A program made the translations under genes and the position numbers. A stretch of DNA of 61,577 nt from Salpingoeca rosetta (taxonomy: Eukaryota > Protista > Choanoflagellata). The stretch lies in assembly GCA_033442325.1 (NCBI GenBank), contig JAWQFM010000011.1, forward strand, positions 875,575-937,151, written 5' to 3'. The notes beneath the pieces are model-generated. The model was not told the origin of the DNA. It was given only the letters and a program-made list of their open reading frames with translations, and made no database searches. Position 1 is the first letter of the stretch. The number at the start of each line of letters is the position of its first letter. This document shows, piece after piece, positions 304 through 61,577 of this stretch.

Positions 304-1101
304 CTGGACAAGTGAGTCGGTGACTGCGAGCGCTCGCACTCCCTGAAGGGCTGCACGACCATCTCCTTGCCAAAGTGGCGGTTCTTCTCGCGAACAATGT
401 CGACGGGCGTCGGGTAGAAATAGGTGCGGGCGAGGAAGTCAACCATGGTCAGCACGCCCGTCACGCCAATGGTCAGGAAGAAGACGGCCCAGAACTTGTT
501 CGCCTCCATCGAGTGCAGGAACACGCCGAAGAAGGGGGATTGGAACTGTGCACAAGGGAATTGGGGGGTGGGGAGTGTGAGGGGTGCGAAGGGTGCCAGC
601 AAGCATACACACATACAGAGCATGACAAACACGCACAACACCAAACAGATCAACAAACAATCAGAGACACAGACACAGACACAGACACACATACATACAC
701 ACACGAACACACGAGCGAGGGGGTTGCACGCACGTAGAAGATCCAGTCATCCCAGGTGTAGAGGACGGAGAAGAGGAGGAACCAGGAGATGGGGCCGATG
801 ATCAGCGTCACAAAGTTGAGCCATGTCCAGTACCGGCTCATCAGGCCAAGCTGTGTGTGTGGGTGGGGGGGGGAGTAACGATAAGCAGACGTATCAGGAG
901 AAGGCGTTGATGTGCAATGGAATTAAGTGGCACACAGACACAGACACACACGCACACACACACACACAGATACAGACACAGACAGACAGACACACATACC
1001 TCCAGGTTGACGACCCAGACGAGGCAGACGGAGATGGTCGTGGAGAGGAACGAGTAGTCGCCGGCCTCCTGCCCGATGCTGTCAACCTATTGCGTTCCAG
1101 C

Positions 1102-1152
<51 letters not shown>

Positions 1153-3809: not shown

Positions 3810-3866
<57 letters not shown>

Positions 3867-8552: not shown

Positions 8553-12074
<3,522 letters not shown>

Positions 12075-12722
12075 GCGGACGCACTGGCAACCGCGGCGGC
12101 AATGGGAGGGAGAACGAATTGGGACACACCAAACACGTTAACATCAGTGGAAGGCAACGAAAGGACTTGCTGATGACACAGCAACGGTACGGTGTGTTTG
12201 TGCGGGTGTGCGTATGTGTGTTTTGGAGGAGTCAGGAGAGGTGCAGTGTGGACAGCAGAGAAGGAACAACACAGAGGGAGACGGAACAACCGGCCGCCCT
12301 CGTTCCGTTTTCGTGACAATCAAAAAACATCATCAGAAATAAACAGATGCAACCACAGCTGAAGGGAGAAGCACCAGCGCCCAAGACGGACGGGGAATAA
12401 TGGATACACAATTGAGGATAACAAAAGCAACAGAGGAGGGTGGCGCGCATGCGTGTGTGGATGCGTGTTGTGGGTGATGAAAGTTGTGTTGCGAGTGGTG
12501 TTGTGTGTTGGGCGTTTGGTGTGGATGAAAGGGGGAAGCAAGTTGGCGGAAGAGTAACATCTGACCTCGCAGTGCAGACCAAGGGCAAGGATTCACACGG
12601 TAAGAAGAGATGGCAGCAGGAACAGCACAAACATAAGAGCTACAGAAACAACAACAGACGAAGAGAAGTAAGCAACGCAGCGCCGTGCGCAATGTGGGCT
12701 GTTAGGCGCGAGGCAGCATGCT

Positions 12723-14951
12723 TCACCACAAGATGGGCTGTGATGAGAAATGCTTGAGGCTGTGCGTCTCCAAATTGCTCAGGAACTTTGGATACTCCCG
12801 CTTCGACACCGCCCTGGCAGCAGAAGGAAGAAAGGGGTGGGGTGAGCACAGTATGTGTTTGGAACGTGCACACACGCACACGCACACACGCACACATACA
12901 CACATACACACGCACACAAACACGCACACACACACACAAACACGCACACACACACACACACACACACGCACACACACACATACACACCCGCACCCGCACA
13001 CACACACACACACACACACAGTGCGCGCAGGCAACGGGGCAGAAAGTATGTAACAGCCATCACAACGGAGAACACGCTGGAGCACATTCCCTCAACAACT
13101 CTTTGACTGCAACCCGTGGCACTGTGACTCACTTGACGACAGAGGCCGGGGCCCAGCCGCCCGGGTGGACATAGGCCAGGTACGTCAGCTTCGCGCCAAT
13201 GTCTGCGCGCGTCAGCTTGCTCTTGTCGGCGCTGGCGGGTACCTGCGTCTCTGCCATGAGCAGCACGTTGGCTGTGAGGCGGACATACTTGTTGGCGGGG
13301 GCGTCGTCGTGGTCCACAGACGTGTTCTGCACCATCCACCGGCTGCAGCGGCAATGCGTGTGGGTGGTGTGTGATTGAGCGGTCGCGAAGAAACACGTCA
13401 CGTGAGCAAGGGCATGCGTGTTTGTGGGAAAGCACACGGATGGATGGATGAGTGGGCAGCTGGGCAGCTGAGGGAAGGTTGGGAACAGAGGTACGGGGCG
13501 CAAAAGCAGCAGGCAGGCAGCATGTGCAAAGCAGGGGCAAGTCTTAAGCAGCCTCAGGCAGTGGCGCTTGCTCGTGCAAGCCCATAGATACGCACTTGGT
13601 GTTGAGTTGGCGCATGTGAGAGAGGATGCATGAATCGCGCTGCGCCGTGGGCCAGACACGCTTGTGGATGTTGTGGCACACGTTCGTGTTGTTGTCCAGC
13701 CACTCCAGCACAAAGAACTTCTCAACCGTGTCTGCAAGCAGTGGATCAGTGCACAGGGTGTGTTGTGGTGTGTGTGGTGGGGGGGGGAGATGAGGCGCAA
13801 GGCAGGAAACCACAGCACTGGAATGCCAACAGTGCGGCTGCAAACGCGCACACGCACAAGGATACCCGCAGGGTTGCAAAGGAAGAGCTCACATACACAT
13901 ACAGACACAAAGATACACACGTACACATACAAACATACGACACATACACAGGCACAAAGATGCGCACGTACACATACAAACATACGACACACAACACACG
14001 ATACACGACATCTGACACACACACACACACACAAGATGGAAAAAGACTCACGTTCCCACTCAAGCCTGAGGTCTGTGTCGAAGAAGTAGGAGCAGACTTC
14101 GCGGCCAGTGAGGCCCGGGATGAAGTGGAATGCCTTGAGCTGGTCCGTCGTCTCCCCAGCGGCCTCTTCGTTGCGCGTGTACACCGTCATCTGGCCCTCC
14201 TGTTCGCGTGCAGTACAGACGCGTTCGTTTGGGGGGGGGGAGGAGACAGGGTGTGCGAGTGAGCGAGTTCAAAAAAGAGCGCCAGGGCACTGGGTTTCAT
14301 GCAGCCAACCCAGCAGCCAACAGAGTCGCGGGCATCGGCAGTGCAAGTGGTACACGCGTCTCAGACATTAGCACATACCTCGTGGGTGAGCAGCCACATC
14401 TCCTCGACAGGCTCGTCTGCCAATTTCAAATTTTCCTTCAGCTTTCCCTCGAGCAGCGACGAAAACTGGTGCGACATGACAGAGCCGGGCGCTGGCTTGT
14501 TCGCCTGTGCACGCGGGGAGGTGACGGTGAGCGTGTGATGCAGATCTCACACGCACACAAACACATGTACACACAACACGCGAGAACACACCACAATCAG
14601 CGCAGGGATAACAGAACACGTCCAACAACAAGATGTTTGGCAACACAAGCAGTACACAGAGCATAGTGGGCAGCCGTCGAGCGAACAGGTGCAGAATGCA
14701 CAGGAGCAGAGAGTGTACGGACCACGCGTTGGGCCTCAAGTTCGCGCTCTCTGCGCTCCTCCTCCTCTTCGGCCTCCAGCTGGTCCAGCCCAATCTCGAG
14801 CGCATCGAAAAACTCCTCGTCGTTCAGCACTGATGGCCCAAAGGGGTGTGTGAGCAAAGGACAGACGGAAAGGTGGTCGGGGGATGACAGGGTGAGGTGG
14901 CTTGTGTATTCGCACGACAAAGTAACTCAACACACCTTCGCTCACGCGAAC

Positions 14952-14982
<31 letters not shown>

Positions 14983-17612
14983 GGTAGGCAGACAGGCAGA
15001 CACACACAGACACACACACACAAACAAACAAACAAACAAACAAAGCAAAACAAAACAGACAAGCAAACAAACAAACAAAACAAAACAGACAAGCAAACAA
15101 AACAAAGCAAAACATAGCGAGGGGGCAAGTACTGACTGCTGTGGGGGCCCTCCTCGAGGTCTGGGTTGTTTGGAAAGGGCTGCGGGGCCATGTCGCGCGA
15201 GCTGCGGACCTCAAGCTCAAGCTTCCGCTTCTTCTCGCTCAGGCGCTCGTACTTGCGCTGCCACTCCTGGCAAGCACGGCAAACACGGGACGTGAGGGGT
15301 ACACGGTGCGAGTGGTATTCCGGGGCGCATTCCCAGGCACGAATAAGCCACGTATGGCAACACACACACACACATACATGCACGCGAAGGCACGCATTCC
15401 ACTCCAATAAACACGCATGGCTCAACAACTCCCCAAAACACCCACGCCCCCTCCCCCGGGCGCATCTGCCTTGGTGGTGGTTCACAGCGCACCTCTTCAC
15501 GCCTGGACATGACGTCCATCCACTCGGTCATTGCGCGGAGGAGACCGGACGACGTGGACTTGACGAGCGCGGCGTCGCGCTGCAGATCGCCAACGTCCGC
15601 CGTCTCCAGCGACGCGAGCGCCCGCTGCAGCTGGTCAATCTGGTGGCGTGCCGGGGTGCCGTGGTGGTGGCGATAATGGAGGGAGTGTGTGAGAGAAAGA
15701 GTGGTGCGGAGACACGGCGCAATTCGGGTGGTCAATGACGTCATCACGACTTGTATTGAGCCTACAAAACAAGCAGACAACACAGACACACACACAAACA
15801 ACAAACAAACAAACAAACAAACACACCTGGCCGACAAATGCGTCGTGGAGGGCCTTTGACTCCATGTACTTGTCTGTGACGGAGCGAGTGTAGGAGTGGC
15901 CCGAAGTTCCGGAGGAGATGGAGGTGAGCGACATGGACGACGGCCGCCGCGTCAGGCCTTTCGCGCGCATCCGCTGCAGTGGGAGATGGCAGCAGGCGCG
16001 GATGATGGGCGTGCATAAGAGTTTGAGGAGGATCAGCGAGGGAGATACATGGAAAGAGCTGATTGGACGTTGAGCTGGCATGTACAGCCATACACAAACG
16101 TTCAAAGTTGAATTCGCACACGCACACACACGCACACACGCACACATATGCATGCACATGCTCTTTCTCTCTCGCATCCCCTTCGCGCGCACATACACGC
16201 ACGCACGCACACACGCACGCACCTGGGTCTCCTGGAGAGACTTGACCCACTCGCCACGCTCCTCTGTGGAGGAAGCGCGGAGGTAGTAGGCGTGGTCCTT
16301 CAAGATGACATCAAACCGCAGCTGGTCGTACGGGTGCGGCTTCACGCGCGCTTGTACCACGTCCACAGTGCCTGCACATGGCCAAACACAGATTTACATA
16401 CGTGAGTGAGTGAGTGAGTGAAAGAGTGAGTGAGTGAGTGTGTAAGTGAGTGAGTGAGTGTGTGTGAGAGAGAGAGAGTGTGTGTGTGTGAAAGAACATG
16501 CGCTTCACACACACACACAATTGTTGTGCTCTGGATCACAAGACATCGACGTTGCCAGCTGTTCATGTGTTCGCATTCAGCAGGCTCACGCTCAAACGAT
16601 GCTCCACACGGTACAGCAACAACGCACCTCTGCAAAACTTCTGCTTGTCGTCAGCGGATTTGAAGTAGGAGAGAATGCCCTTCTGCAGGACGACGTAGCG
16701 GTCTTGCCAGCCGTGGATGTAGTTTGTCCACTTGGCCATCACGCCCTCCCTGCACGGCATCACGTCTTCGTCGCCGCTGTCAGAGGCGGTTCCATCTGAC
16801 AGCGCGTCCGGCGAGTGCCGGTCCGTCATAAACGACCCAGACACAACGTCGGATATGCTGCGCTTGTGCTTCATGAATGTAGCGCGGGTGGTTGCGGCGG
16901 GAAGGTGCACGACCGTTCCCGTGCGCTCAGACAGCGCCGATGCTGCGCGCACACGGCGACGGCTGCTCCCACGGCCGCCCGCACACGTGTGCGGGGACGG
17001 TGTGCGGTCTGCGTCAGAGGGCACGGGTGGTGGCGCGTGCCCGTCGGCGGCACCCGGCATGATGGTGGTGTCTGGGTCGGTGGTAGCGGTGGCAGGGTTG
17101 TTGGGGGCAACATCAGCGTCAATGGCGTCAATGGCGCTGTCTTGGACGGAGGCGCGGCTGGCACCGCACTGCTCGTCACTGTCGGGATGGGCGGCAGTCA
17201 GGTCGGAGGCGTGGGCTGGCCGCATGCTGCTGTTTACGGTGGTGTTGGTAGTGTGGGCTGCCTCTGCTGTGGAGTGGGCTCCTTCGTGAAGCGGAGGCGT
17301 GCGTTGGTGGTGCAGGTCCTCTTCGACCTCCGTGTCGTCTCCGTCCTGGTCAACGGCGGCTTCTTCCTCTTGTTCTTCTTCTTCTTGCTGCTGTTGCTGC
17401 TGTTGTTCCTCCTCCTCTATTCTTCGCTGGTACTGCTGCTGCTCGTGTTGGTGGGTTTCCTCGGCCTCTGTCTCTGGCGCCTCTGGCAGCGGCGGTGCTG
17501 CCTTGTCCTTTCGGTCGCCCTTCTTGCGCTGGGGTTCCTCTGCTGCTTGATCGTACCTGCCCAGCGTGTGCCGCTTTACAAACGAACCGGTTCGTCGCAG
17601 AAAGTCAGCCAT
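12723..17612 (-). CDS. CERT1: Ceramide transfer protein (PH + serine-rich motif + FFAT + START) with a long N-terminal extension
   Basis: PH domain [20 protein letters not shown]...RFDV...YYLRAS; serine-rich [17 protein letters not shown]; EEGPHS|[16 protein letters not shown] (FFAT); START segments [35 protein letters not shown]; C-terminus [11 protein letters not shown]...QPILW*. Confidence 0.93.
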
Positions 17613-20600
17613 CGAGCAACCGCGGCCAGAGGGTTGGCTTGGCTTGGTTGGTGGGAGGTGTCGGTGGCTTGCTTGGGGGTGGTGTGCGGATGGATTGGCG
17701 ACAACTTGCTTGCAACTGCTGCGGAGCAATTAATAACTGCTGATCACTCGTGCAATGCCAGCGCACAAGGTCGATCGAGCAAAGGCAGAAAGGTGGAAGA
17801 AGAAGAAGAAGAAGAAGAAGGAGCAGAAGATGATGATGAAGATGTGCAGCGGCCGAGGTGGCTCTTCTTTCTTGCCTCTCTGCGTCTTGCTTCTTTTTTT
17901 GGGGTGTGAACCAAGCTGACCGAAGGAAGTCAGCTGCGAGGTATGAGGCAAGCAACGGCGCGCGCGTGTGTGTGTGGGTGTGGGTGCGAGTGCGTGTGTG
18001 AGTGGGTGAGTGCTTGCTGATCAGGTGACACAAATAGAAGAAGAAGAGGGCATGCGATCACAAGAAGGGCAAGAAGGTGGTTGCTGTCTGCTGCACTGCT
18101 GTTGATGAAGCAATGAGGCGATGCAACAATGGAAGAGGAACGGGGCAATCAACGCGCCAGGTGCACGTGGGGATCCCCCACTGCCCACTGGTGCAACGTG
18201 CAATGTGCTTGTTGTGTGTGTGTGTGTGCGTGTGTGTGTGTGTGCTTGTTGTGTGTGTGCACGAACACATGATTCACTCACGCAAAGGGCTTGGTTGGCT
18301 GGTGGTCGTTGGTTGGTGGCGATCAAGGGAGGAGAAAAACGAAAACAACATGCACAGAAACACACGAGGCAAAAGTGTTGGTGTTGTCTTGTGAGCGCGG
18401 CACCGGTGTCACAAAGCAAATGCACGAAGAAGCAAAGCAAGCACACGCACACGGAACAGAGCAAGCAAGCAAGCACGTACACGACGTTAGCAGGGTCAAC
18501 GTCATCATCATCTGACGCCCACACACCATCATCACACGACACAAAACACAAACACAAACAAAGCCCACCTTGCTGTGTCGAGGGAAACGAACAACAAACA
18601 AACAACCAAGAACGGAGCAAGTGTGCTGCTGCCTGTCTGTCTGTCGTGGTGAACTGGCAAAGCGAGCCAAGGCAAGCAAAGCACGCGAGACAGGAGGGTG
18701 TTCCTTCCTTGTTTTTGCTTTTCTTTCTTCTTTGCTTGTTGCTTGTTGTTTGGTGGTTGTTGGTGTGATGCGAGAGATAGCCAAGCAAGCGAAAGTTCTG
18801 TGTGCTTGGCTTGCTTCTTGCTTGTGTGTTTTTGCGGGTGGGCAGAAAGCAGAAGAAGAAGAAGAAGAGGAGGAGGTTGTCCCGCCACACAACAACAGGA
18901 CAAGCAGTAGCGTGAGTCATGAAGGAAATAAAAAAATTCTTGCATGCAGGTTTCGGGGCGTTCGAGGCCCCGTTGGGTGTGGCGTTGGCAACACACTCTG
19001 AATTCAGTTTTGTTCGAAAATTCATTCTAATCATTGCATAACATTCAGCTGGATATCTTCAATGAATGTTCGTGCACACATTCACACAAAATGGGATTCT
19101 AGAAGGCCGGACTTTTTTGGTTTTCATCATCAACACACAAGAGCAAGAAGGGCAAAAGCAAGGCAACCAATATCCAACCTTCCATTTGTTTCCATCTTTT
19201 CCCCTCCCGTTCCTTCTCTGTTTCTCTGCTTCTTCTGTTGTGCCGTGTTGGACTGTTGTTGGGTGTTGACGTTGTCGGCAGCTTCTCGACCGTTCATCAT
19301 TTTCACCAGCCCGTCAGATCGCCGAGCGTGCCAGGTTGTTGTTGTTGTGTGTGCCATCGCGGAGCAAGCAAGCAAACAAAAAAGGTGAGCCGAGAAAAGA
19401 AACGAAGCACCGGTTTTCTTGCTGTCTTTCGTAAGTCATGGCAGTCTGGCAAAAGCTGATGCTGGATTACAGCAATCACACACAAGAACCAGACACACAC
19501 AAAACCGCAGCAGCAGCAACATCACACGGGGTTGCCCCTTCTTGAGCTTCCTCTCCTGTCTGTGCTTCTTTCTTTCTTGGGGGTCGGTCGCTTTATTTCT
19601 TATTCATCCCTTGTTCCGCACCACGCTCCAAGAAGTAAGCAAGCAAGCGCGCAAGCCAGCCGCGCCACCGTGCGTTCGAGATTGCCCACACGCCAGCACC
19701 AGCGGTGGGCGCGCGTGGGTGTGTTGTGCTGTGTATTGATTGTGTTGTGTTGTGTCAAACTCACTGTCCTGACGTGTCTCCCCCCCCCCCTCGCTTTCTC
19801 CCCTTTCTCCCTCTTCTCCAACTTTCTCTCACCACTTCCCACCGTCAGCCCCAACCCACTCACACACGTCCACCAACCCGTCCACCAATACATCCCCAAA
19901 CATATACACGCTGCATATTTGCCTTGTGTGCTGCCATCTAAAATACGACACAAACTGACACATTGCATCTCCCCCTCTTGTGCCTCTCTCCACATCCCAT
20001 CTCTACCTCTCATCTCCACACATATACACTCTCCTCTCCCTGCCCCTTTCTCTCCTCATTTCCACTTTGTTCCAATCCACAAGACAGCTGTCCACTTGAC
20101 GCGAGCCTTTGCTGCGGTGAACGAACGAACGAACGAAGAAACGAGTACCTAAGTCCTGAACACTCTCTCGGCAACTTGGAAACCTCCCAACTCCCTCCCT
20201 CCCCCCCCCTCTCTCTCTCTCTCGTCGAAACTACTTTGGCGCCCCTTCCCCGGGATCTCACCAAGAGCACCCGCTTCAAAGCCGTCTTCGGTATTTGAAT
20301 CAAGCCCATCCATCCATCCATCCATCCAACACCAAGCACTTAACAACTTACACAACCAACCAACAACCAACCAACCAACCAACCAACCCACCAACAACAG
20401 CACTCATCGACAACTCTTTGAACGTACAACACACAACACACACAAGACCACAACACCAACAAGGCACACACGCGCCTCTCTCCGCTTCCCTTGCGCTTGT
20501 GTGATCCATCCACCCATCCATCCATCCATCTGCTTGCTTCCCCCCCCCCCCTTTTTTTCTTGTCTTCTCCTCCTCTTCCGTTCCACTTGTGTGCCCACCA

Positions 20601-43848: not shown

Positions 43849-44178
43849 TCGAACAAAGTCGCGAAAGTCATGCGAGAACTCCGATGGCAGCTCTGGTGCG
43901 GGCTCGCTCACAATCACTTGCACCAGCTCAATTGGGGTCAGCCCACTCCTGCCCATTTGCCCATTGCAGGTGTCATGTGAGGTGGTGGTCCGTCAGCACG
44001 TCGTTGCGCTGGGTGGTGCTTATGCGTTGTGGTGCATTGGGAAACAGCAACGCTCGTGTCGTGCATGACATCACACAATCAAGGCAGCACGTGCGATGTG
44101 CCGACACACCTTCGAATCAAGTATGGAAACGTCCCCGTGGCAAGCTCTTGCAACGTCAGTCCAAGGCTCCACGTCTGC

Positions 44179-44261
<83 letters not shown>

Positions 44262-44865
44262 TGTGTGTGTGTGTGTGTGTATGTGTGTGTGTGTGTGAAA
44301 ATGATAACACGGGTGCAGAAGTTCTCACATACGCTACACCCAAACACAAGCAAGCATGCACATACCTCTGATCGCTCATTGTATGGCTGATGCTGTATTC
44401 TTTCCGGTGCCATGTATGCATTTGTGCCAACAAATGTCCTGGTCACTGATTGCTCCAACTCCCGGCTCACACCTGCCAACCAAGGAGCAAAGAACCGAGC
44501 ATGAGCATTGGACACGCATGTCAGAGATGGTGGCTCGGTGGAGGACAAACAGAACTCCACAACACACTGACCTCCACTAGGAATCGAACGAAACTTGCAT
44601 TGCTTCTCCAAAACACAACATGCCCTCATCACACACAGGCGCACACAAGCACAAATCAGGAATCAAATGAATCGACGTACCGAAATCACAGAGCTTGATG
44701 TGCCCTTGTCGGTTCACGAGGATGTTGGAGGGCTTCACGTCGCGATGCATCACCTTCACCTTTGACAGATAGGACAGACCGTCCAGCACAGAGCGCGTGA
44801 TCACCGCCAGCACGGGCTCGCTGATGATGCCGTGCCGATCTAACGACCCACCTGCATGGTTGTGT

Positions 44866-44904
<39 letters not shown>

Positions 44905-45582
44905 CGTGTATGTGTATGTGAATGTGTGCGATTGTGTGTTTGAATGCGAACGTGAATGCGTGTGTTTCTGTGTGTGCGAATGCGAATGAATGTGTACAAA
45001 CAAGCGTGCGAAGCGGAGGTGCACGACATGGTGCTGATCACGTGAACAGATGCAATCCGGCCAGCGGGTGAAACACAAGCAAGCAAGTCACGTTTGAACC
45101 CACCATCCATGTATTCTGTGCAGATGTGGATGCCGTTATCGCCAAAATACGTCCCAAAGTATGTGATGATGTGTGGGGAGCGGCACTGCAAATACGAACA
45201 ACGTAAGACATGGGTGGAAACCAAGGCGTCACGAAGAAGCCTCGAAAGTGGATCTTGTCACAATTGGTGCTGTCGGTTGGCAGCACCACCGACACTGCAC
45301 ACACACGCACACACACACACTCACTCACTCACTCACTCACTCACTCACTCACTCACTCACACTCACTCACTCACTCACACACACATATGTTCACATAGAT
45401 GCGCACCTTGTGGAGAATGTCGAGTTCCGTGACGATGCGCTGTTGTACAGCGGGACTCACGTCAAAGTCAATCACCTTCACCGCCATGATGGCATTGGTC
45501 GGGACGTGCCGCGCTCTGCACACACATACACACATATGGCAGGCGAAAAGTGAGGCATGACGTGACGTGGTGACAGCGACAC

Positions 45583-45645
<63 letters not shown>

Positions 45646-47064
45646 GGCTTGACCTGTAAACGGAGCCCGCTGCCCCACGACCAATGAGCTGGAAACCCGT
45701 GACGTCGCTTGGCTGAATCTGCAATGCCAAGCACAACCCGACAGTAACCATACGTGATGAGGAGGCTGCATTTCCCTGCCTGTGTTGTATGTGTGTCTGA
45801 ACGTCTGTCTGCACTTCCTTGCTTGTGTTTGAGCACCACATTGTATCTTGTGCCTGTCTTTGCGCGTGATGGAAAGTACGAGCATCACCTCTGTTGATTG
45901 CTCGTCCACCGCGTGCCTGACTGGCGCGTCCAGTTCCGTCGCCTGGCCTGTCTCTGGATTCACCTGCGAGCACGCACACACACACACACATACACACACG
46001 CGCAGACAGCGTTCAGCGTGGCATTGCTGGTGTGTTGGCCACCAATGAAAGCAACACGCGTGCGCGTACTGCAAAGACATTGCATGCGAGCCTTACCTGT
46101 ACGTACAGCCCAGGCCCTGCAGAGAGACGCAATCATGGCAAGCAAACAAGCACGTGGCCACAAAGCATTGATGAGGCACCTGTCACACATGAACCAAACT
46201 CATGGGCGTGCGCAAGCAAACAAGCAAACAAGCAAACAAGCAAACAACCAAGCAAGCGTGCAGTGTGACTAACGTTGATACTGCGGAACGGCGTGAATGA
46301 TCAACGCTTTGCTGTCGCTTCCCTGCCTCAACCACTGCAGCAAGAAATGACAGCACAACGGCACAGACGGTAGTCAAATGAGCCCCACGGGAGTGCCAAG
46401 ATGAGCACCACAGCAATGCTAGTAGCAACTCCCACACATACATACACATGAAAGCTAACAAGCGCACACACACATATAGCACTCACCCATTGTGTCATTT
46501 GATCCACGTCTGCTTGGCTTGTCACAGTGCAGTAATCCTCTTCATCGGCATCTGCACATGACACACATCGACACAGATGTATCAGACAACGTGCGTATTC
46601 AAACAACGGACACACACTCAACCCAGATGCGTCGAAGAATGTGCACATTCAAACACGCGAACACAAACACACGAGAGCGCGCAAGGGAAGTGGTAGACAC
46701 GCACAAAGGAATTGGTCAAAGTCTGCGTCGAAGACGTGTCGGAGCATCTCCTGTGGTTGGTGAGATTGGGCAGTTCAAAGTGACCACCATGTAGCAGCAC
46801 CGTGCGAGGGCAAAGGGTTGAACCAGTCACCCGCAGGAAGGCAAGGCCACTGGTGAGTTTCAAGCGGGTAGGATGACTGACTAGCAGTGCACCACCAAAC
46901 AAACAAGACTGAAGCATCCCCCCCCCCACCCCCAAGAGGCATGTCAAAGCGAGATCGCGCACGCACCATGAACGTATCAAAGGTGAGGGGAAAGTCCAAC
47001 GCAAGCTCGGCCGAGTGAATGCCGTCCTCCTTGTGAACATGGCAGACCACGTTTACTTTTGCCA

Positions 47065-47065
<1 letters not shown>
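43447..47065 (-). CDS. MAP2K5: MAP kinase kinase with an N-terminal PB1 domain (MEK5-like)
   Basis: PB1 acidic OPCA-like motif [18 protein letters not shown]. Kinase motifs [48 protein letters not shown] and activation loop [19 protein letters not shown] (the GTNAY form is MEK5-like). Confidence 0.88.
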
Positions 47066-52483: not shown

Positions 52484-54219
52484 TCACTCAACGGGGCGCG
52501 TCTCAAAGCCGCACTCGCTGAGGTGCTGCTTGACCTGCTGGATGGGCACCTCCTCCCTGTGGAAGATGCCTGCAGCGAGGACGGCTGCCGGTTTTGCCGT
52601 GCGCAGACACGCGGAGAAATGCTCCACTTTGCCGGCGCCAGAGGAGGCAATCACGGGAATGGAGACGGCATCCACAATGTCCGCAATCAGTTCTGGCACC
52701 ACCATTCATGCGCACATGCGCCAAGTGAACCGAGTGTTAACATCCATGTGTGTCAAAGTGTGTGTGTGTGTGTGCACGATAACTACTAAATCGTGCTCCA
52801 CAGGCAGTATCAGCATGTACAAAGAAGGGGAGGGAGCAGGCAAACCACGCTCGCACATGCACGCGCGCGCGCTCGTGCACGCACACGTACCAAGGTCGTA
52901 GCCGCTGTTCGTTCCGTCCTTATCCATGCAGTTGAGGAGAATTTCGCCGGCACCCAGCTCCTCGCACGTCCTTGCGAGCTCGTACGCGTCAATGTCCCTG
53001 CACGGATGGCATCCAGTGTCAACGGTGGAACACAATGCATACGAGTGCAGGACAAGCAACAACAAGTACCCACAGAAACACAGAGAGAGAGAGCGCGCGC
53101 GCGCAAGAAAGAGTGAGAAAGAGCAACGACCTCAAGGACGCACCTTGGTTCTCGGCCGCCTTTGATGGTACATTGGTACCAGCAATACGCTTCGCCGTTG
53201 GGCCCGGGCACTTGCGTCTTGATTGTGTGGTGCTGTGCATGCATGCACGAGCAGGCGTGTGAGACACATACACACACACTCACACACACGCACACACGCA
53301 CACACACGCACACATACACACACATACACACACATACACACATGCGAGCACAGTACATGCAGACGCACTTCCACACGCAAGCACCCGCGCAAGGCACGCA
53401 AAGCCACGTATTGCACTTGTGATTTGGGGGTTGCATGGCATCACACCTTTGTATCATCGGGTGACGCAACGTACACGCGACGCGGGTCAACGGAGATGAC
53501 AACGGCCTGTGCACCGTACACGTGCGAGATCTGCTCGATGCTGGACCTGATGTCACCAAAGGGCAGTGAAGCAATCACATGGATTAAGGGTACCAGCAAG
53601 GAATCGGGGCGTTCGGGGAAGCTTGCGCCAGAACGAAGCTGAGGGAAACAAGTCGGGCAGGAGGGGGGGGGGGCATGAGACGTGGAGTCAAAACAGCGGG
53701 GCCAGGCAGACTTGGGCGACTCACTTTCCGGTCTTCACGCCCGTGCGCAGAAACTGCTCAGTGATGAGGACGGCGTCGGAGCCGATGGAGACCTTGTCTG
53801 CGCCGCTGCGGAAGTATTCGCTGGCAACCTCGAGCGCCGTGTGTGGGGTGCCGTCGGGATCTGTCACGTCCCGGATGCCGCCGCCAATCGTCAACGGCAC
53901 AAACACGCGCTCAGACGTCTTGCGTAGCACCTTTGCCGGGGGGGGGGGCACAAATGTTGCAATTGAGTGTGGTAGGTGGGAGGGCAGCGTGCGGGAAGAC
54001 AGAGAGAGGGTGAGGGGTGAGGGGTGAGGGGTGAGGGAGATGCACTCATGCGAGTTATGGCCTCACATATGCATGGTTGATGTAATCAGGCACTGCGAAG
54101 GTGATTGGCACATTGACATCGTGTAACCTAAATAAATGCAGGGCGCAGTTCATAGAAGAACGAAAACGGACGCACACAGAAAAAGACATGTGGACGCATG
54201 GAAAAGACTATCGACGCAG

Positions 54220-54276
<57 letters not shown>

Positions 54277-55365
54277 CCTCAAGCATGGGCTGGTCACGAA
54301 GTGGAGAGTCACGAAAAGAGGTGATGTTGAGGAAAGTGACCTCGTCAGCACCATCCGTATAGTACCGAGCAGCCAGATCCACAGGCTTGCCCAGGTTCCG
54401 CACATTGCGAGAATCCTTCTCTCGCACGTCATACCTGTCGCGAGGACGGTAAAGGAGGGCAGCAAAGAGCACATTGAACCAGGGTTGAGCCCCGCACGCT
54501 TGAATGCATCTTGAATCAGTGCACATGCACACACACGCACACGCACACACACACACGCACACACACACGCTCGCACACACACGCTCACACACACGCTAGC
54601 ACGCACACCTACACACGCAACAGAAGCATGAGCAGAGCAACGAAACACATGGAGGTGTGAGTGCCAGGCACTCACTGGTCGCCTTTGGTGACAACAAGGT
54701 CTCCGTGATCGTTTGTGCGGACGTCGAGACAAGCGATCAGGCGGGGTGCAAGGTTTGTAGGCGGTGGGTTCGGCGTCACAACCATGTCAGCGCTGCCAGC
54801 CTCACTGGGGCTGTCCTGCAGGAGAAACTGCTTGATGAGGCGAAGCCCTGCCTGCCCGCTCTTCTCTGGGTGGAACTGCGTGGCCAGCACGTTGCCCTTG
54901 CACACGGAGCTGACAAACTCGATGCCGTAGTTGGTGGTGGTGAGCGCCCAGGCCGCGGTTCCCCGTGTTGGCAGCGCAAGGAAGCTGTGCACGAAGTAAA
55001 ACTTGCTGCTCGCACCTGCTTCCTCCAGCACCTTGGATGACTGGCGTGGGTTGACGCCATTCCATCCCATGTGCGGCACAGCGAGATGGTCGGGGACCTG
55101 GAAACGCGAAATGGTGCTGTCAATGACCCCGAGCCCCTCGATGCCCGGCGACTCCTCGCTTCCTTTGAACAGCGTCTGCATTCCCAGGCAAATGCCCAGG
55201 TATGGGCGGCCCGACGCAATGAACGCCCGCAGAGGTTCGATGTATCTGTTGGGATGGCGTGAATGTACGCAGGCGGAGTGTTACGTGAAGCGCGAAAGTA
55301 TGCAGTGACATGTGGAACGAAAAGAGGGAGGGAAGGAAGAAGGGAGGGAGGGAGATGGTGTGTCT

Positions 55366-55436
<71 letters not shown>

Positions 55437-55979
55437 TGTGTCTGTGTCTGTGTCTGTGTCTGTGTGTGTGTGTCTGTGTCTGTGTCTGTGTCTGTGTCTG
55501 TGTCTGTGTCTGTGTCTGTGTCTGTGTCTGTGTCTGTGTCTGTGCCTGTCTGTCTGTTTGTTTGTGTGAGTGCGGGTGTTGGGGATGAGGCTTGTGCACA
55601 TCAAGAAAACAGAGAGAAGGAAGAAGAAAGAGAGACACAAAGACACAGACGCACAAGCACACACAAGCACACACACACACACACGCACACACGCACACGT
55701 ACACACACGCGTGCGCACACACACACACACACGCACATGCAAACGCACATGCACACGTGCATCTGACCCAAGCTCCTCAAGACGATGCATGCAGGCGCCA
55801 AACGAGCCAACGCCTGGAAAGATGAGCTTGTCGGCCTTGTCAAAGTCATCTGCGCTCCGGATGAAGTTGAGCGATACCCCAGCTACCGCAACAGCGTTGC
55901 AAACGCTGCGAACATTGCCTGCTCCGTAGTCAAGGAGGTACACCCCGCCGCCCCCAAGCTGCTGGCCACCAGTGCTCAT
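52484..55979 (-). CDS. HIS7: Bifunctional imidazole glycerol phosphate synthase (HisH-HisF fusion)
   Basis: Glutaminase part: [31 protein letters not shown] (catalytic Cys), [21 protein letters not shown]. Cyclase part: [75 protein letters not shown]. Confidence 0.96.
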
Positions 55980-56254
55980 GATCCGTGGTCGTGTCTCGTG
56001 TCGTAATCGTGGGTTGGTGTTGGTGTTGGTGTTGGTGTTGGTGTTGTTTTGTTGCGCACACAAAGTGCTGCATTTCACGAGACCGCGAAAACACACGTCA
56101 TTCATTCACGTCTCACTGAACAGCAACAGCGACATCGCAGCGGTCACTGACGACACGAGCTCTCCCTCCAGTTCTCATTGCAACCACACAAACACAAACA
56201 CACAGACTCACACCGTGTCGGTTAGGTTGAAGCGCAATCGATCCGTCTGCAACT
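55980..56254. promoter_or_regulatory. Putative bidirectional promoter shared by HIS7 and ATIC
   Basis: 275 bp between divergent start codons; contains the imperfect inverted repeat TTTCACG-agac-CGCGAAA (56073-56090). Confidence 0.6.
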
Positions 56255-56481
56255 ATGGCTGAGGGCTTGGTTCATGTGAAGCGGGCGCTGGTGTCGGTGT
56301 TTGACAAGCAAGGCATCGACGTGCTTGGCCCAGCACTTGCGCGCCATGGTGTGACCGTGCTGTCGACGGGTGGCACCGCCGCTGCGCTCCGAAAGGCTGG
56401 CGTTCCCGTGGTGGACGTACAAGACGTCACAAAGTGGCCCGAGATGCTTGGTAATGTGTGTGTGTGTCTGTCTGTCTGTGT

Positions 56482-56535
<54 letters not shown>

Positions 56536-58124
56536 GTGTGTGTGTGTAGGTAAGTGTAAGTGTCTGTATGTCTCTGTGTCTGTCTGTCTCTGTGCGTGTG
56601 TCTGTCTGTCTGTCTGTGTAAGTGTGTATGTGTATGTGTGTGTGTGTCTGTCTGTCTGTCTCTGTGCGTGTCTGTGTTTGCTTATGATTGCGTCCGTTTG
56701 TGCATGTACTGCCCTGCCTTTCTCACTCCGATGGCTGCTGCGTGTGCCTTCTCCTCCCAATGCATCAGGCGGCCGAGTGAAGACGTTGCACCCAGCCATC
56801 CACGGGGGCCTGCTTGCCAATCGCAAGGAAGAGCAGCACCTCAAGGAGCTTGCAGACCTCAACATTGAGCCCATCGACATGGTCATCTCCAACCTCTACC
56901 CGTTTGAGAAGGTGGGTGCGTACACCTTCACGTCTGTCTGTGCCTGTCAGCCTGGCTAGGAACTGGGTTCGCTTGGCCGTGCACACCTGTTTTGTGATTC
57001 ATGCGCACTATTCGTGATGCTCTATCGAACCCTCTCACATGCCTGTGATCCACCACCGCCTCTCACATGCCTGTGATCCACCACCGCCTCTCCCCAATCT
57101 GTCCAATCTCTATCCCTCGCCCATACCCATTTCGTTCCTTCCCCCTTCCCTTATCTTCATTCATGACAGACGGTTGCATCTGGCAAGGGCTTTGAGGACT
57201 GCATTGAGATGATTGACATTGGCGGCCCAACAATGGTGCGCGCGGCGGCCAAGAACTGCGACAGCGTTGCTGTGGTCACCAGCCCTGACCAGTACGAGGC
57301 CGTTCTCGCAGAGATGGACAAGACAGGCGGTGCCCTTTCAGTGGCTACCAGGCGCAAGCTGGCCGCCAAGGCCTTCACCCGCACCTGCGAATACGACGCG
57401 GCCGTCGCCGCGTACATGACCAAAGAAACCACCCCAGACCAGGCAGTGTCTTCCCGCTTATACGTACAGGGTGGTGCGTTGCGGTACGGTGCCAACCCGC
57501 ATCAGAGCCCCGCCAGCTATGCCAGCGTCCTCGGCCATGCCCTGCCATTCCGTGTGGTCAACGGGCAACCGGGGTACATCAACCTGATGGACGCCCTCAA
57601 CGCCTGGCAGCTGGTCCGCGAGCTCAACTCCGCCCTGGACCTTCCCGCCGCAGCTTCCTTCAAGCACGTCAGCCCTGCTGGTGCGGCGGTTGCCACGCCG
57701 CTCTCCGCACAATTGGCCAAGGCGTACGAGGTCGATCCAAGCACGCTCTCAGACCAGGCCCTGGCATATGTGCGGGCGCGCGGCGCGGACCCACTCTCCA
57801 GCTACGGCGACTTTGTGGCCATCAGCGGCGTTGTGGACGAGAGCACAGCGCGCCTGCTGCAGTTTGAGGTCAGCGACGGCATCATCGCGTCCGGGTTTGA
57901 GCCCGCGGCCTTGGAGATCTTAAAGGCCAAGAAGAAAGGGCGCTATCTCATCCTGGAAGGAAACCTGAAGTACGCGGCCCCAGCTGATGAAGTCAAGGAA
58001 GTTTTTGGCGTGGCCCTCACCCAGATTCGGTGTGTGTGTGCGTGTGTGTCCGTCTGTGTGTGTCTGTGTCTGTGTGTACGTCTGTGTGTGTCTGTGTCTG
58101 TGTGTACGTTTGTGTGCATGTGCA

Positions 58125-58155
<31 letters not shown>

Positions 58156-58846
58156 GTGTGTGTGTGTGTCTGTGTCTGTGTCTGCCTCTCTGTTGGCCTG
58201 TTGGTGTCCCTATGGTTGAGACGGTAGCTCAGTGGTGTTGTGTTGTCAATGCTCCTCTCAGATGCTTGGCTTGCTCCATTATGGCTCACACTGTCGACGT
58301 TATGCTGCTTGCCGCTTGCCCATTATAGCAACACGGCCACCATTACACCAGATCTTGTCAACTCCAAGGTGGTCACGAAGCAAAGCATCCACCAAGAAGC
58401 CCTTCGTGACCTCGTCGTTGCGACCATCGCCGTCAAGTACACCCAGTCCAACTCCGTGTGTTATGCCGCCGAGGGTCAGGTGATCGGTGTTGGTGCTGGT
58501 CAGCAAAGCCGTGTGGACTGCGTCAAGCTGGCTGGCCGTAAGGTGGACACGTGGCGTGCGCGCACCCACCCCAAGGTTCTGAACCTCAAGTTCAAGGCCG
58601 GCGTGAAGGTGAGCGCTTCGGTTTGACAGTGTTTGCATGCACAACGAAAGGGAGGAGTGTACACGTTTACGACAGACAATGGAACCGGTCGGGCTGCCAC
58701 AACTCTCAACTCACCTCGCGTATCTGTTTTGAAATGCAGAAACAAGCTCGGATCAATGCCCGTGTTGCATACATTAGCAACGACATGACACCTCAAGAGA
58801 AAACACACTGGGAAGAGCTCTTCGAGGAGGTTCCCGAGCCACTCAC

Positions 58847-58897
<51 letters not shown>

Positions 58898-59395
58898 TTA
58901 CAGTTGTATTTGGAGCTCCACATTTCTCTCATCTGTGGCCTGTCACAGATGGAGGAGTCCAGGGAATGGGCTGCATCTTTCAAGAACGTCTCGCTGTCGA
59001 GTGACGCATTCTTCCCCTTCCGTGACAACATTGACCAGGTTTGTGTGTGTGTGTGTGTGTCTGTGTGTCTGTGTGTGTGTGTGTGTGTGTTGCGCGTGTA
59101 TGTGCGTGTGTGTGTTGCATGTGGTGTCACATGCCTCTGACTTGGTTGGTGTTTGGCGTTGTTGTGGGCTTGAGGACAGCATGTCCTTGAGTTGCAACTA
59201 TGACACGCGTCTAGTCGTCTCGATCAAAATATAGCTCTTGCTCACTCGTCCCGCCAACACTTGCAGGCCGCAAAGCACGGAGTTGCGTTTGTGACCCAGC
59301 CTGGCGGCAGCGTGCAGGACGACACCGTGATTGAAGCCTGCGACGAATACGGCATGGCCATGTCCTTCACAGGCACACGTCTCTTCCATCACTGA
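56255..59395 (+). CDS. ATIC: Bifunctional AICAR transformylase / IMP cyclohydrolase (PurH, ADE16/17)
   Basis: [18 protein letters not shown]|[97 protein letters not shown] (eukaryotic-type C-terminus). Confidence 0.97.
57031..57092. repeat. 28-bp tandem duplication in an ATIC intron
   Basis: cctctcacatgcctgtgatccaccaccg occurs twice in tandem. Confidence 0.85.
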
Positions 59396-59870: not shown

Positions 59871-61577
59871 TGTAGGGGAAGGAGGAGAGGAGAGGCAGTT
59901 GGCACACATGCATGCCAGCAGAGAGGAAGGAATGTTTGCCAACGGAAAAACCACAAAGCAGGTGTTGTTGGCAAACAAGACAAAAACCACATGAGAAGGC
60001 AAATTAGGAAGGACTCAACACGAAACAGAAACTCACTCACTCTCAACACTCCCCCTCAACTGCCTTCCTCTGCTCCGTCTCAGCCGTCGATGTTCCCACC
60101 AATCGTGGCAGGTGCTGCTCGAAGGTCTGCTTGTCCAGTGCCTTGGTCAGCGCGTCGGCAACCATCCGCGTGCCGGGACAGTGCTGCAGCACAATGGTTC
60201 CGTCGGCGATGAGCTCCCGCACGAAGTGGTGGCGTACCCGGATGTGCTTCGTGCGCGGCTTGGTGACGTGGTCGTTGCCGATGGCGATGGCCGCCTGGTT
60301 ATCTGTCAGCATCTTGGTGGCTCCAGCCTCGGGCTCGTCGAGGTCCATGAGCAGCTGCCGCAGAAAGACGACGTCCTGCGCTGCAGCGGAGATGGCCATG
60401 TACTCGGCCTCGGCGGTGCTCAGCGCAACCGTGGGTTGCAGCCGACTGCTCCAAGACACAAGACAGCCGTTGATGTAGCAGGTGAAGCCCGTCGTGGAGC
60501 GGCCCGTCAGCTGGTCTGTGCCGAAGCTGGCATCGCTGTAGCACACAAGGTCCAGCGGCTGGTCCTTGCGCGTGCCGCTGCGTCGCTTGAAGAGGAGGCC
60601 GTGCTCGCTCGTCGCCTTCAGGTACCGCACGACGTGCTTGGCTGCCTGCCAGTGGACCGTCGTGTAACGGTCCATGTAACGGCAGAGCAGCCCGCATGCG
60701 AAGCTGACGTCTGGTCTCGTGCGGGTTGGCCAGGTTACAGGAGCGAGCCGACGAGGTTGCGGAAAGGCAAGCGTCGGTCGGGCTGCTCGCTGATGCTGGA
60801 GGCGTCGATGCCAACACGCATGGGCCGTGGAACTGCTGGCTGCCCGCTGCCAGGTTGAAGTCGTTGACGNNNNNNNNNNNNNNNNNNNNNNNNNNNNNNN
60901 NNNNNNNNNNNNNNNNNNNNNNNNNNNNNNNNNNNNNNNNNNNNNNNNNNNNNNNNNNNNNNNNNNNNNNNNNNNNNNNNNNNNNGATCTGCTGCTTGCA
61001 GGCACGGATGTGGCGCTCGCTGCTGCCGCTGATGATGAGGTCGTCGACGTACGTGATGATCCATGTGCGCTGTCCGTCGTCGTGGAGCTTGGTGAAGAGG
61101 CAAGCGTCGACGTTGCTTTGCGCCCATCCGTTGGTCTTGAGGAAGGTGTGCAGCTTCTTGGCCCATGCACGGCCAGCTTGCTTGAGGCCGTAGAGCGGCT
61201 TGAGCAGCCGGCACACCTTGCCCGCGTAGCGTTGAGCGCCGTCGCCGATGTCGGTGAAGTGCGGCGGCAGCTTCATGTACAGCTCCTCCTTGAGATCAGC
61301 CTGCAGGTAAGCCGACTTGAAGTCGAGCTGGTGCAGCTGGTGCTGTCGTTGCAGGGAGACGGCGAGCACAGTGAGGATGGTCTTGGCTGCTGGTGTTGGG
61401 GCGTAGGTCTGGTCGAAGTCGATGCCCGGTCGCTGGCTGAAGCCCTTGGGCGACCCAGCGGGCCTTGAAGCGCGTCAGCGTGCCTTCCGCATCACGCTTC
61501 ACCTTGAAAATGAACCGGGACTTGAGGGGCGTGTGTTGCCGTGGGAGGAGCTGACTGGGATGATCTTGATGACGCCG
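59871..61577 (-). mobile_element. Ty1/copia LTR retrotransposon, 3' portion (RT-RNase H, PPT, putative 3' LTR); continues off the right edge
   Basis: RT: FKARWVA, QLDFKSAYL, LYGLKQAGRAW, YVDDLII. Copia RNase H: YSDASF, STAEAEY, DNQAAI, KHIRVRHHFVRE, ADALTK. The ORF ends at 60043. PPT TGAGGGGGAG (60049-60058) is immediately followed by TGTTGA (LTR start 60048). The distal LTR end is uncertain: 59871 preferred, 59963 or 59410 possible. Confidence 0.9.

What the first reader, a model, noticed from the sequence alone, without database searches (positions are those of the whole stretch)
52484..59395. HIS7 and ATIC head-to-head: a candidate two-gene AICAR producer/consumer module
Seen: the HIS7 ATG (55979, minus) and the ATIC ATG (56255, plus) are divergent and 275 bp apart. 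Established: IGP synthase splits PRFAR into IGP plus AICAR, and ATIC is the enzyme that converts AICAR to IMP, so these two enzymes form the junction between histidine and purine biosynthesis. In budding yeast the orthologues are unlinked but co-regulated in trans by Bas1/Pho2, with AICAR acting as a signal. Inference: here the coupling may be built in cis through one bidirectional promoter, i.e. a cross-pathway metabolic gene pair that matches AICAR release to its removal, in a relative of animals (which lost histidine synthesis). I know of no description of this pairing. Caveat: nearly all genes in this window are in divergent pairs, so only the identity of the partners is informative.
Basis: partly seen in the sequence, partly recalled or inferred. 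Interest (0 to 1): 0.85.

Follow-up and report, generated by a model that had tools for sequence, protein, structure and literature searches.

The report
HIS7–ATIC head-to-head gene pair
In the choanoflagellate Salpingoeca rosetta the enzyme that releases AICAR (HIS7) and the enzyme that consumes it (ATIC) do sit back-to-back on one very short shared promoter, but relatives keep the two genes only loosely linked or pair HIS7 with another gene, so a purpose-built metabolic module is not shown.

Summary
The window is Salpingoeca rosetta scaffold GL832964. HIS7 (fused HisH-HisF, 8 exons, 549 aa, minus strand) and ATIC (7 exons, 601 aa, plus strand) start 275 bp apart, head to head. Stranded RNA-seq shows both are expressed from opposite strands, with 5' ends no more than about 150 bp apart, so they share one promoter region.

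In Monosiga brevicollis the two genes are also linked. However, they lie 7.9 kb apart on the same strand, with three genes between them, and each has a different head-to-head partner.

A marine metagenome choanoflagellate has the same order as M. brevicollis: MEK5-like kinase, cyclophilin, HIS7. Contigs from two further choanoflagellate-like organisms also lack the tight pairing. Six other eukaryotic loci, including one fungus, show no linkage.

The head-to-head pairing therefore looks like a local rearrangement specific to the S. rosetta lineage. It occurred inside an older block that also holds an unrelated kinase. Co-regulation could not be tested properly. No shared regulatory motif held up.

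The pair is most likely an ordinary bidirectional pair in a compact genome whose partners happen to be suggestive. The conserved loose linkage is mildly interesting.

The parts
52484..55979 (-). HIS7, imidazole glycerol phosphate synthase (fused HisH-HisF), 549 aa. Exons: 55979-55768, 55245-54676, 54434-54278, 53930-53725, 53546-53447, 53232-53144, 52997-52891, 52692-52484. By gene order it is PTSG_04501.
   Evidence: Pfam GATase and His_biosynth. GT-AG splice model guided by homologues. Same span and length as the NCBI model. Introns 1 and 2 are seen in RNA contigs and reads. Exon 2 aligns to yeast His7 (1jvn), including the GIC(L/V)G, FHPEKS and IACLDVR motifs.
55980..56254 (.). Spacer of 275 bp between the two start codons. 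It holds both 5' UTRs and the shared promoter region.
   Evidence: Sequence. Reads of the HIS7 strand reach into 55958-56054 and none lie beyond. Reads of the ATIC strand begin weakly in 56055-56151 and strongly in 56152-56248.
56006..56055 (.). (GTTGGT)n microsatellite in the middle of the spacer. It lies at or between the two transcript 5' ends.
   Evidence: Sequence. The read tool flagged it as a skipped repeat.
56255..59395 (+). ATIC (AICAR transformylase / IMP cyclohydrolase), 601 aa, PTSG_04502. Exons: 56255-56450, 56769-56911, 57170-58029, 58329-58608, 58740-58847, 58949-59038, 59267-59395.
   Evidence: Pfam MGS and AICARFT_IMPCHas. 100% match to NCBI protein P0288 of S. rosetta, threaded exactly onto the window. 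Intron 2 is supported by 32-67 spliced reads per run. It is of the eukaryotic type: 238-256 bits to the 593-605-residue bifunctional ATIC chains (7mgq, 1p4r, 1g8m; I take these from memory to be fungal, human and avian), against at most 114 bits to the shorter PurH chains (9ou7, 3zzm, 4ehi, 1zcz; from memory bacterial). It is single copy in the genome.
44100..47065 (-). MEK5-like STE7 protein kinase (PTSG_04499 by gene order). It is the third member of the linkage block shared with M. brevicollis.
   Evidence: NCBI gene call with Pkinase. Five collinear exon matches to the M. brevicollis kinase that lies between ATIC and HIS7, while the best paralogue matches only two. Kinome table of Fairclough 2013.

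Best explanation
HIS7 and ATIC of Salpingoeca rosetta are two ordinary, intact, expressed housekeeping enzyme genes. They are transcribed divergently from one very short shared promoter region.

The two genes were already linked within about 10 kb, together with a MEK5-like kinase gene, in the common ancestor of S. rosetta and M. brevicollis. A local rearrangement in the S. rosetta lineage then brought them head to head. It also separated HIS7 from the cyclophilin gene that is its head-to-head partner in M. brevicollis and in a marine relative.

The shared promoter probably gives both genes similar basal, growth-linked expression, as for most head-to-head pairs in this compact genome. There is no evidence that it was selected to match AICAR release to AICAR removal.

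Shown: gene identities, gene structures, the 275 bp spacing, expression on opposite strands, close 5' ends, and the arrangements in relatives. Inferred: the direction of the rearrangement, and that the pairing is neutral.
For: M. brevicollis locus L006 reads ATIC(+) 10001-12778, SH3(-), kinase(+) 16896-18134, cyclophilin(-) 18761-19736, HIS7(+) from 20690. ATIC's divergent partner there is an LRR gene and HIS7's is the cyclophilin.

TARA scaffold L013 is collinear with M. brevicollis for kinase, cyclophilin(-) and HIS7(+), and has no ATIC in the 6.9 kb upstream of HIS7. L019 has no ATIC exon in the 650 nt upstream of HIS7. L011 has no HIS7 exon in the 975 nt upstream of ATIC.

The five choanoflagellate-type HIS7 sequences form one clade (SH-aLRT 98). 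S. rosetta groups with L013/L018 to the exclusion of M. brevicollis (support 87). The kinase-cyclophilin-HIS7 order shared by M. brevicollis and L013 is therefore the likelier ancestral state. The best cyclophilin match in S. rosetta is on another scaffold.

The kinase in the block is unrelated to AICAR, which argues for leftover synteny rather than selection on the metabolic pair.

No linkage is seen in Mixia, in three other eukaryotic HIS7 loci, in L009, or in 80 metagenome loci.

The genome is compact, with a median of 10 genes per 50 kb (PMC4773876). All genes in the annotated 20 kb alternate between divergent and convergent neighbours.
Against: Linkage of exactly these two genes in both sequenced choanoflagellates stands out, because the two genomes 'display relatively little gene synteny' (PMC4054682). 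Uniform chance of lying within 10 kb is about 5 in 10,000.

In three RNA runs the depths of both genes rise and fall together: HIS7 about 28, 15, 47 and ATIC about 103, 32, 119. This is only n = 3 with no control pairs.

The polarity of the rearrangement rests on a single-gene tree with moderate support (87).

The closest relative sampled (L008, ATIC 72-80% identical) has only 252 nt upstream of ATIC, so it cannot be scored.
Confidence: 0.66

Rival explanations
1. Selected cis-coupling. The shared bidirectional promoter is kept by selection because it ties the AICAR producer to the AICAR consumer and prevents build-up of AICAR/ZMP, which is a signal and is toxic in excess. This would follow the model that genes bracketing toxic intermediates become linked.
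For: The partners share a metabolite, the spacer is 275 bp, and the transcript 5' ends lie within about 150 bp. The genes are also linked in M. brevicollis. The toxic-intermediate linkage model exists for fungi (McGary et al. 2013, as cited in PMC3914699). (S)ZMP is a regulatory signal in yeast (PMC6430606).
Against: The head-to-head arrangement is absent from all four relatives that could be scored. In M. brevicollis and L013 the conserved divergent partner of HIS7 is a cyclophilin. ATIC also handles the much larger AICAR flux of the purine pathway itself, so matching it to HIS7 alone is not an obvious need (inference). ATIC (PTSG_04502) appears in a list of differentially expressed genes sorted by ID, and PTSG_04501 does not appear next to it. 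That is only weak evidence, because such lists depend on a threshold. No shared motif survived testing.
Confidence: 0.14
2. A loose ancestral cluster kept by selection. It is not the bidirectional promoter but the neighbourhood that is maintained in choanoflagellates: ATIC and HIS7 within about 10-15 kb, in one chromatin or co-inheritance domain. Order and orientation within it are free to change.
For: The two genes lie within 15 kb in both complete genomes despite otherwise low synteny. The stored part of the scaffold-by-scaffold orthologue table shows S. rosetta scaffold 11 scattered over many M. brevicollis scaffolds in small counts.
Against: The block also keeps an unrelated MEK5-like kinase, as plain leftover synteny would. 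In the L011/L013/L018 lineage no ATIC lies within 6.9 kb upstream of HIS7, and no HIS7 or kinase lies within 4.7 kb downstream of ATIC. There is no linkage in Mixia or the other eukaryotes checked. Only two genomes give the full picture.
Confidence: 0.15
3. Joint horizontal acquisition. HIS7 is most similar to bacterial fused HisHF, so the pair might have arrived together from a bacterium.
For: S. rosetta HIS7 is 64-66% identical to bacterial 527-531-aa HisHF, against 48-56% to other eukaryotic HIS7.
Against: ATIC is clearly of the eukaryotic type. In the tree the choanoflagellate HIS7 clade lies outside the bacterial clade and next to fungal-type HIS7. [quoted passage not shown] None of the bacterial-type loci has purH nearby.
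Confidence: 0.02

Closest known systems
Bidirectional (head-to-head) promoters of compact eukaryotic genomes
   Same: Two protein-coding genes on opposite strands with start sites far less than 1 kb apart. Both are expressed. Such pairs are common in gene-dense genomes (PMC4773876).
   Different: Nothing structural differs. Only the identity of the partners, producer and consumer of one metabolite, is unusual.
Divergently transcribed metabolic gene pairs such as yeast GAL1-GAL10 or Aspergillus niiA-niaD, and the 'toxic intermediate' linkage model of McGary, Slot and Rokas 2013 (cited in PMC3914699; the named examples are from my own knowledge)
   Same: Enzymes that make and remove one potentially harmful intermediate share a promoter region.
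   Different: Those pairs are conserved across many species and have mapped shared regulatory sites. Here the arrangement is seen in one species only, no shared site was found, and the enzymes belong to two different pathways.
Purine-histidine cross-pathway regulation in yeast by (S)ZMP through Bas1/Pho2
   Same: It concerns the same metabolic junction. AICAR monophosphate links histidine and purine synthesis and acts as a signal (PMC6430606).
   Different: It works in trans on unlinked genes. No homologous mechanism was tested or found here.

Membership tests
Imidazole glycerol phosphate synthase, fused HisH-HisF (eukaryotic HIS7 type) | Class I glutamine amidotransferase domain followed by a HisF-type cyclase domain in one polypeptide | tested here: met
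   Pfam GATase on exon 2 and His_biosynth on exons 4 and 8. The spliced 549-aa protein aligns end to end with 527-608-aa HisHF proteins.
Imidazole glycerol phosphate synthase, fused HisH-HisF (eukaryotic HIS7 type) | Catalytic motifs: the nucleophile Cys (GICxG), the His/Glu of FHPEKS, and the cyclase Asp of CLDV | tested here: met
   All three motifs align with yeast His7 structure 1jvn. That these residues are the catalytic ones comes from my own knowledge.
Imidazole glycerol phosphate synthase, fused HisH-HisF (eukaryotic HIS7 type) | Rest of the histidine pathway present, so that the PRFAR substrate is made | tested here: met
   HisG on C12, PRA-CH plus histidinol dehydrogenase on C14, IGPD on C14, and HisA_euk-like exons on C17. 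A histidinol phosphatase, PTSG_06037, is annotated. The aminotransferase step was not checked.
ATIC / PurH bifunctional enzyme | MGS-like IMP cyclohydrolase domain plus AICAR transformylase domain | tested here: met
   Pfam MGS and AICARFT_IMPCHas. Exon 3 gives 238-256 bits to solved ATIC structures with the FKHVSPAG motif aligned. The model is identical to NCBI protein P0288.
Bidirectional promoter pair | Opposite strands, with transcription start sites less than 1 kb apart | tested here: met
   ATG to ATG is 275 bp. Stranded reads place both 5' ends between about 56005 and 56200. Exact start sites are blurred by a microsatellite.
Bidirectional promoter pair | Correlated expression of the two genes | tested here: inconclusive
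   In three runs both genes rise and fall together, but there are no control pairs. In Fairclough 2013 ATIC is in a differential-expression list without its neighbour PTSG_04501.
Eukaryotic metabolic gene cluster kept by selection | Linkage and arrangement conserved across related species beyond background synteny | tested here: not met
   Linkage is kept in M. brevicollis at 7.9 kb, but order, strand and divergent partners differ. The tight pair is absent in L013, L019 and L011. Background synteny could not be quantified.
Eukaryotic metabolic gene cluster kept by selection | Shared cis-regulatory element or common specific induction | tested here: not met
   TGACGT occurs at chance level. The best shared 8-mer, ACGATTAC, is matched by 25 of 300 shuffles, is not enriched in the genome, and is absent upstream of four other his genes. 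Induction was not testable.

The most novel reading that the evidence does not exclude
ATIC and HIS7 have been kept within about 10-15 kb of each other since before the split of S. rosetta and M. brevicollis because selection favours joint control or joint inheritance of the enzymes that make and remove AICAR. In S. rosetta this culminated in a single shared promoter. It would be a cross-pathway primary-metabolism gene cluster in a close relative of animals.
Probability: 0.13. Interest if true: 0.6.

Novelty: new member of a known kind. Interest (0 to 1): 0.3.

Why it matters
If the pairing were selected, it would be a rare case of primary-metabolism gene clustering outside fungi and plants. 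It would also offer a simple, testable example of cis-wiring at the junction of histidine and purine synthesis in the closest living relatives of animals. As the evidence stands, it mainly shows two things. A suggestive gene pair can arise by local reshuffling inside an old linkage block. And choanoflagellates retain a few small conserved gene neighbourhoods despite very low overall synteny. The 275 bp spacer may be practically useful as a compact two-way promoter for S. rosetta transgenes.

Tried and rejected
1. Horizontal transfer of HIS7, or of the pair. This was suggested by 64-66% identity to bacterial fused HisHF. It was rejected by the trees, by the eukaryotic type of ATIC, and by the absence of purH next to the bacterial genes.

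2. CRE/GCN4-like half site TGACGT in the spacer. The window has 51 matches against 59 expected, so there is no signal.

3. Shared 8-mer ACGATTAC. It occurs in the S. rosetta spacer, upstream of both M. brevicollis genes, and in L011. However, 25 of 300 shuffles also give some 8-mer in at least 4 of 7 sequences. The genome count is 460 against 481 for the reversed control. It is absent upstream of HisG, HIS4, IGPD and HisA. The lead was dropped.

4. A staggered alignment of exon translations on a full-length scaffold protein, intended as a search profile. MAFFT misplaced the short exons, so it was not used.

5. A search with the thraustochytrid HIS7 P0010. It returned mostly bacterial HisHF and no choanoflagellates.

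6. Joining L011 and L013 to test linkage in a third lineage. The two contigs do not overlap.

7. Expression values for HIS7 in the Fairclough 2013 supplements. PTSG_04501 is not in the stored, truncated files.

8. The closest relative, L008. Its contig ends 252 nt upstream of ATIC, so it is uninformative.

Full report
**What is there**

The window is part of Salpingoeca rosetta scaffold GL832964.1 (G000:C11:875575-937151). The ATIC exon search returns the NCBI S. rosetta protein at 100% identity, and its genomic locus has the same gene order as the window.

On the minus strand, Pfam finds a class I glutamine amidotransferase domain and HisA/HisF-type domains. On the plus strand it finds an MGS-like domain and the AICARFT/IMPCHase domain.

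A GT-AG splice model guided by homologues gives an 8-exon HIS7 of 549 aa, 55979 to 52484. The span and length equal the NCBI model.

Threading NCBI protein P0288 onto the window reproduces ATIC exactly in 7 exons, 56255-59395.

Exon 2 of HIS7 aligns with yeast His7 (1jvn), including the Cys, His/Glu and cyclase Asp motifs. ATIC exon 3 scores 238-256 bits against the 593-605-residue bifunctional ATIC structures and at most 114 bits against the shorter PurH structures. From memory the first group is fungal, human and avian and the second bacterial, so I read ATIC as the eukaryotic type.

ATIC is single copy. HIS7 is the only HisF-type gene found. The other histidine genes are present elsewhere in the genome. 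HIS7 should therefore really release AICAR in this organism.

**Expression and promoter**

Three stranded RNA-seq runs and one set of transcript contigs were laid on 54600-57500.
- Reads of the HIS7 strand cover its exons 1 and 2 and reach into bin 55958-56054. None lie beyond.
- Reads of the ATIC strand begin weakly in 56055-56151 (depth 1.4-5) and strongly in 56152-56248 (2.4-48).
- A (GTTGGT)n repeat at 56006-56055 sits between the two and blurs the exact ends.

The untranscribed gap is thus at most about 150 bp, and one promoter region must serve both genes.

Mean depths were about 28, 15, 47 for HIS7 exon 2 and about 103, 32, 119 for ATIC exon 3. They move in parallel, but three runs without control pairs prove nothing.

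In the supplements of Fairclough et al. 2013, ATIC is PTSG_04502. It appears in a differential-expression list sorted by gene ID with counts ranging from 426 to 3832. PTSG_04501, which by gene order is HIS7, is not listed next to it. This is weak evidence against lock-step regulation, because such lists depend on thresholds.

**Relatives**

In Monosiga brevicollis (CH991549.1, locus L006) the order is ATIC(+) 10001-12778, a small SH3 gene(-), a protein kinase(+) 16896-18134, a cyclophilin(-) 18761-19736, and HIS7(+) from 20690. The two genes are linked, 7.9 kb apart, but not adjacent and not divergent. ATIC is head to head with an LRR gene, and HIS7 with the cyclophilin.

The kinase matches the S. 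rosetta kinase at 44100-47065 over five collinear exons. The next best S. rosetta kinase matches only two. By gene order the S. rosetta kinase is PTSG_04499, listed as the only STE7/MEK5 kinase. A three-gene block (kinase, HIS7, ATIC) of about 13-15 kb is therefore shared, with order and orientation shuffled.

A TARA marine metagenome scaffold (L013) is collinear with M. brevicollis: kinase(+), cyclophilin(-, 75-95% identical exons), HIS7(+). It has no ATIC in the 6.9 kb upstream of HIS7.

Contig L019 has 650 nt upstream of HIS7 without the highly conserved first ATIC exon. Contig L011 has 975 nt upstream of ATIC without HIS7 exon 1, and 4.7 kb downstream holding a BBS1 gene.

The HIS7 sequences of S. 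rosetta, M. brevicollis, L013, L018 and L019 form one clade (SH-aLRT 98) beside fungal-type HIS7 (97). They also share exon boundaries, so I treat these contigs as choanoflagellate. Within the clade S. rosetta groups with L013/L018 (87), leaving M. brevicollis outside.

On that tree, the kinase-cyclophilin-HIS7 order shared by M. brevicollis and L013 is the older state, and the S. rosetta arrangement is derived. The best S. rosetta match to that cyclophilin is on another scaffold.

The closest relative by ATIC (L008, 72-80% identical) could not be scored, because its contig ends 252 nt upstream of ATIC.

Outside choanoflagellates no partner lies within the available flanks:
- the fungus Mixia osmundae;
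- three unnamed eukaryotic HIS7 loci;
- locus L009;
- 80 metagenome loci, mostly bacterial fused HisHF.

**How to read it**

Fairclough et al. report 4,994 orthologue pairs but 'relatively little gene synteny' between the two choanoflagellates. The stored part of their scaffold table shows scaffold 11 scattered in small counts over many M. brevicollis scaffolds. Against that background, finding ATIC within 10 kb of HIS7 in M. brevicollis is not expected by uniform chance (about 20 kb in 41.6 Mb, or 5 in 10,000). The linkage is therefore inherited from the common ancestor.

Whether it was kept by selection is a separate question. The block also keeps an unrelated kinase. A rough estimate (my inference) is that with a few thousand enzyme pairs sharing a metabolite, about one such pair per genome lies within 10 kb by chance. 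Retention of one of them in two species is uncommon but not extraordinary.

Given an ancestral distance of three or four genes, a single local inversion or transposition is enough to make the pair head to head, so selection is not needed to explain it.

It also has no support from motifs: TGACGT is at chance level, and the best shared 8-mer did not survive controls.

I therefore put about two thirds on an incidental, lineage-specific bidirectional pair inside a leftover synteny block. I put about 0.14 on selected cis-coupling in S. rosetta and about 0.15 on a loosely selected neighbourhood.

**Comparison with what is known**

Structurally this is an ordinary bidirectional promoter pair, of which compact genomes have thousands.

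In idea it resembles divergent metabolic pairs such as GAL1-GAL10 or niiA-niaD, and the toxic-intermediate linkage model (McGary et al. 2013, cited). It lacks their conservation and their mapped shared sites.

The yeast purine-histidine cross regulation by (S)ZMP through Bas1/Pho2 works in trans and was not examined here.

Full-text searches found no description of a HIS7-ATIC pairing. The scan's own notes hold nothing on it either.

**Verdict**

This is a new member of a known kind, with interest of about 0.3. The most useful follow-ups are a genome-wide synteny control and a co-expression ranking against all other head-to-head pairs.

Noticed in passing
L006:16115-22778 and L013:1852-8035: A MEK5-like kinase(+), a cyclophilin(-) and HIS7(+) are collinear between Monosiga brevicollis and a TARA marine metagenome scaffold. 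This is a small conserved choanoflagellate gene neighbourhood with HIS7 head to head with the cyclophilin. The best S. rosetta match to that cyclophilin is on scaffold C2 (G000:C2:2324779-2324922).
   Followed up: partly
proteins P0176-P0287 (metagenome and MAG contigs): Bacterial fused HisHF proteins of 527-531 aa (Desulfobulbaceae, Desulfobacterales and other MAG labels) are 64-66% identical to S. rosetta HIS7. They form a short-branched clade nested among eukaryotic HIS7 lineages. This raises the question of transfer between bacteria and eukaryotes for the fused gene. The direction was not resolved, and the tree has no outgroup.
   Followed up: partly
window 56006-56055; introns of both genes, e.g. 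55315-55761, 56449-56680, 58030-58328: A (GTTGGT)n repeat lies in the middle of the shared promoter. Long (TG)n/(CA)n and related microsatellites fill most introns of both genes. They break short-read mapping and probably also assemblies of relatives.
   Followed up: no
window 60043-61577: A Ty1/copia-type retrotransposon (RVT_2, integrase-type domains in the NCBI call) lies on the minus strand just downstream of ATIC. An assembly gap of N interrupts it at 60870-60985. I observed it only.
   Followed up: no
G000:C14:302939-304240 and G000:C14:349583-352464: The IGPD (HIS3-type) gene and the fused PRA-CH/histidinol dehydrogenase (HIS4-type) gene lie on the same scaffold, about 46 kb apart. HisG is on C12 and a eukaryotic-type HisA on C17. 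S. rosetta thus appears to have a full histidine pathway, which animals lack.
   Followed up: partly
window 56003-56010; L006:9584 and 20299; L011:590: The 8-mer ACGATTAC occurs once in the 61.6 kb window, inside the spacer. It occurs exactly twice in the 22.8 kb M. brevicollis locus, upstream of ATIC and upstream of HIS7. Controls make it marginal: 25 of 300 shuffles match it, it is not enriched genome-wide, and it is absent upstream of four other his genes.
   Followed up: yes
It may mark the rearrangement.
   Followed up: no
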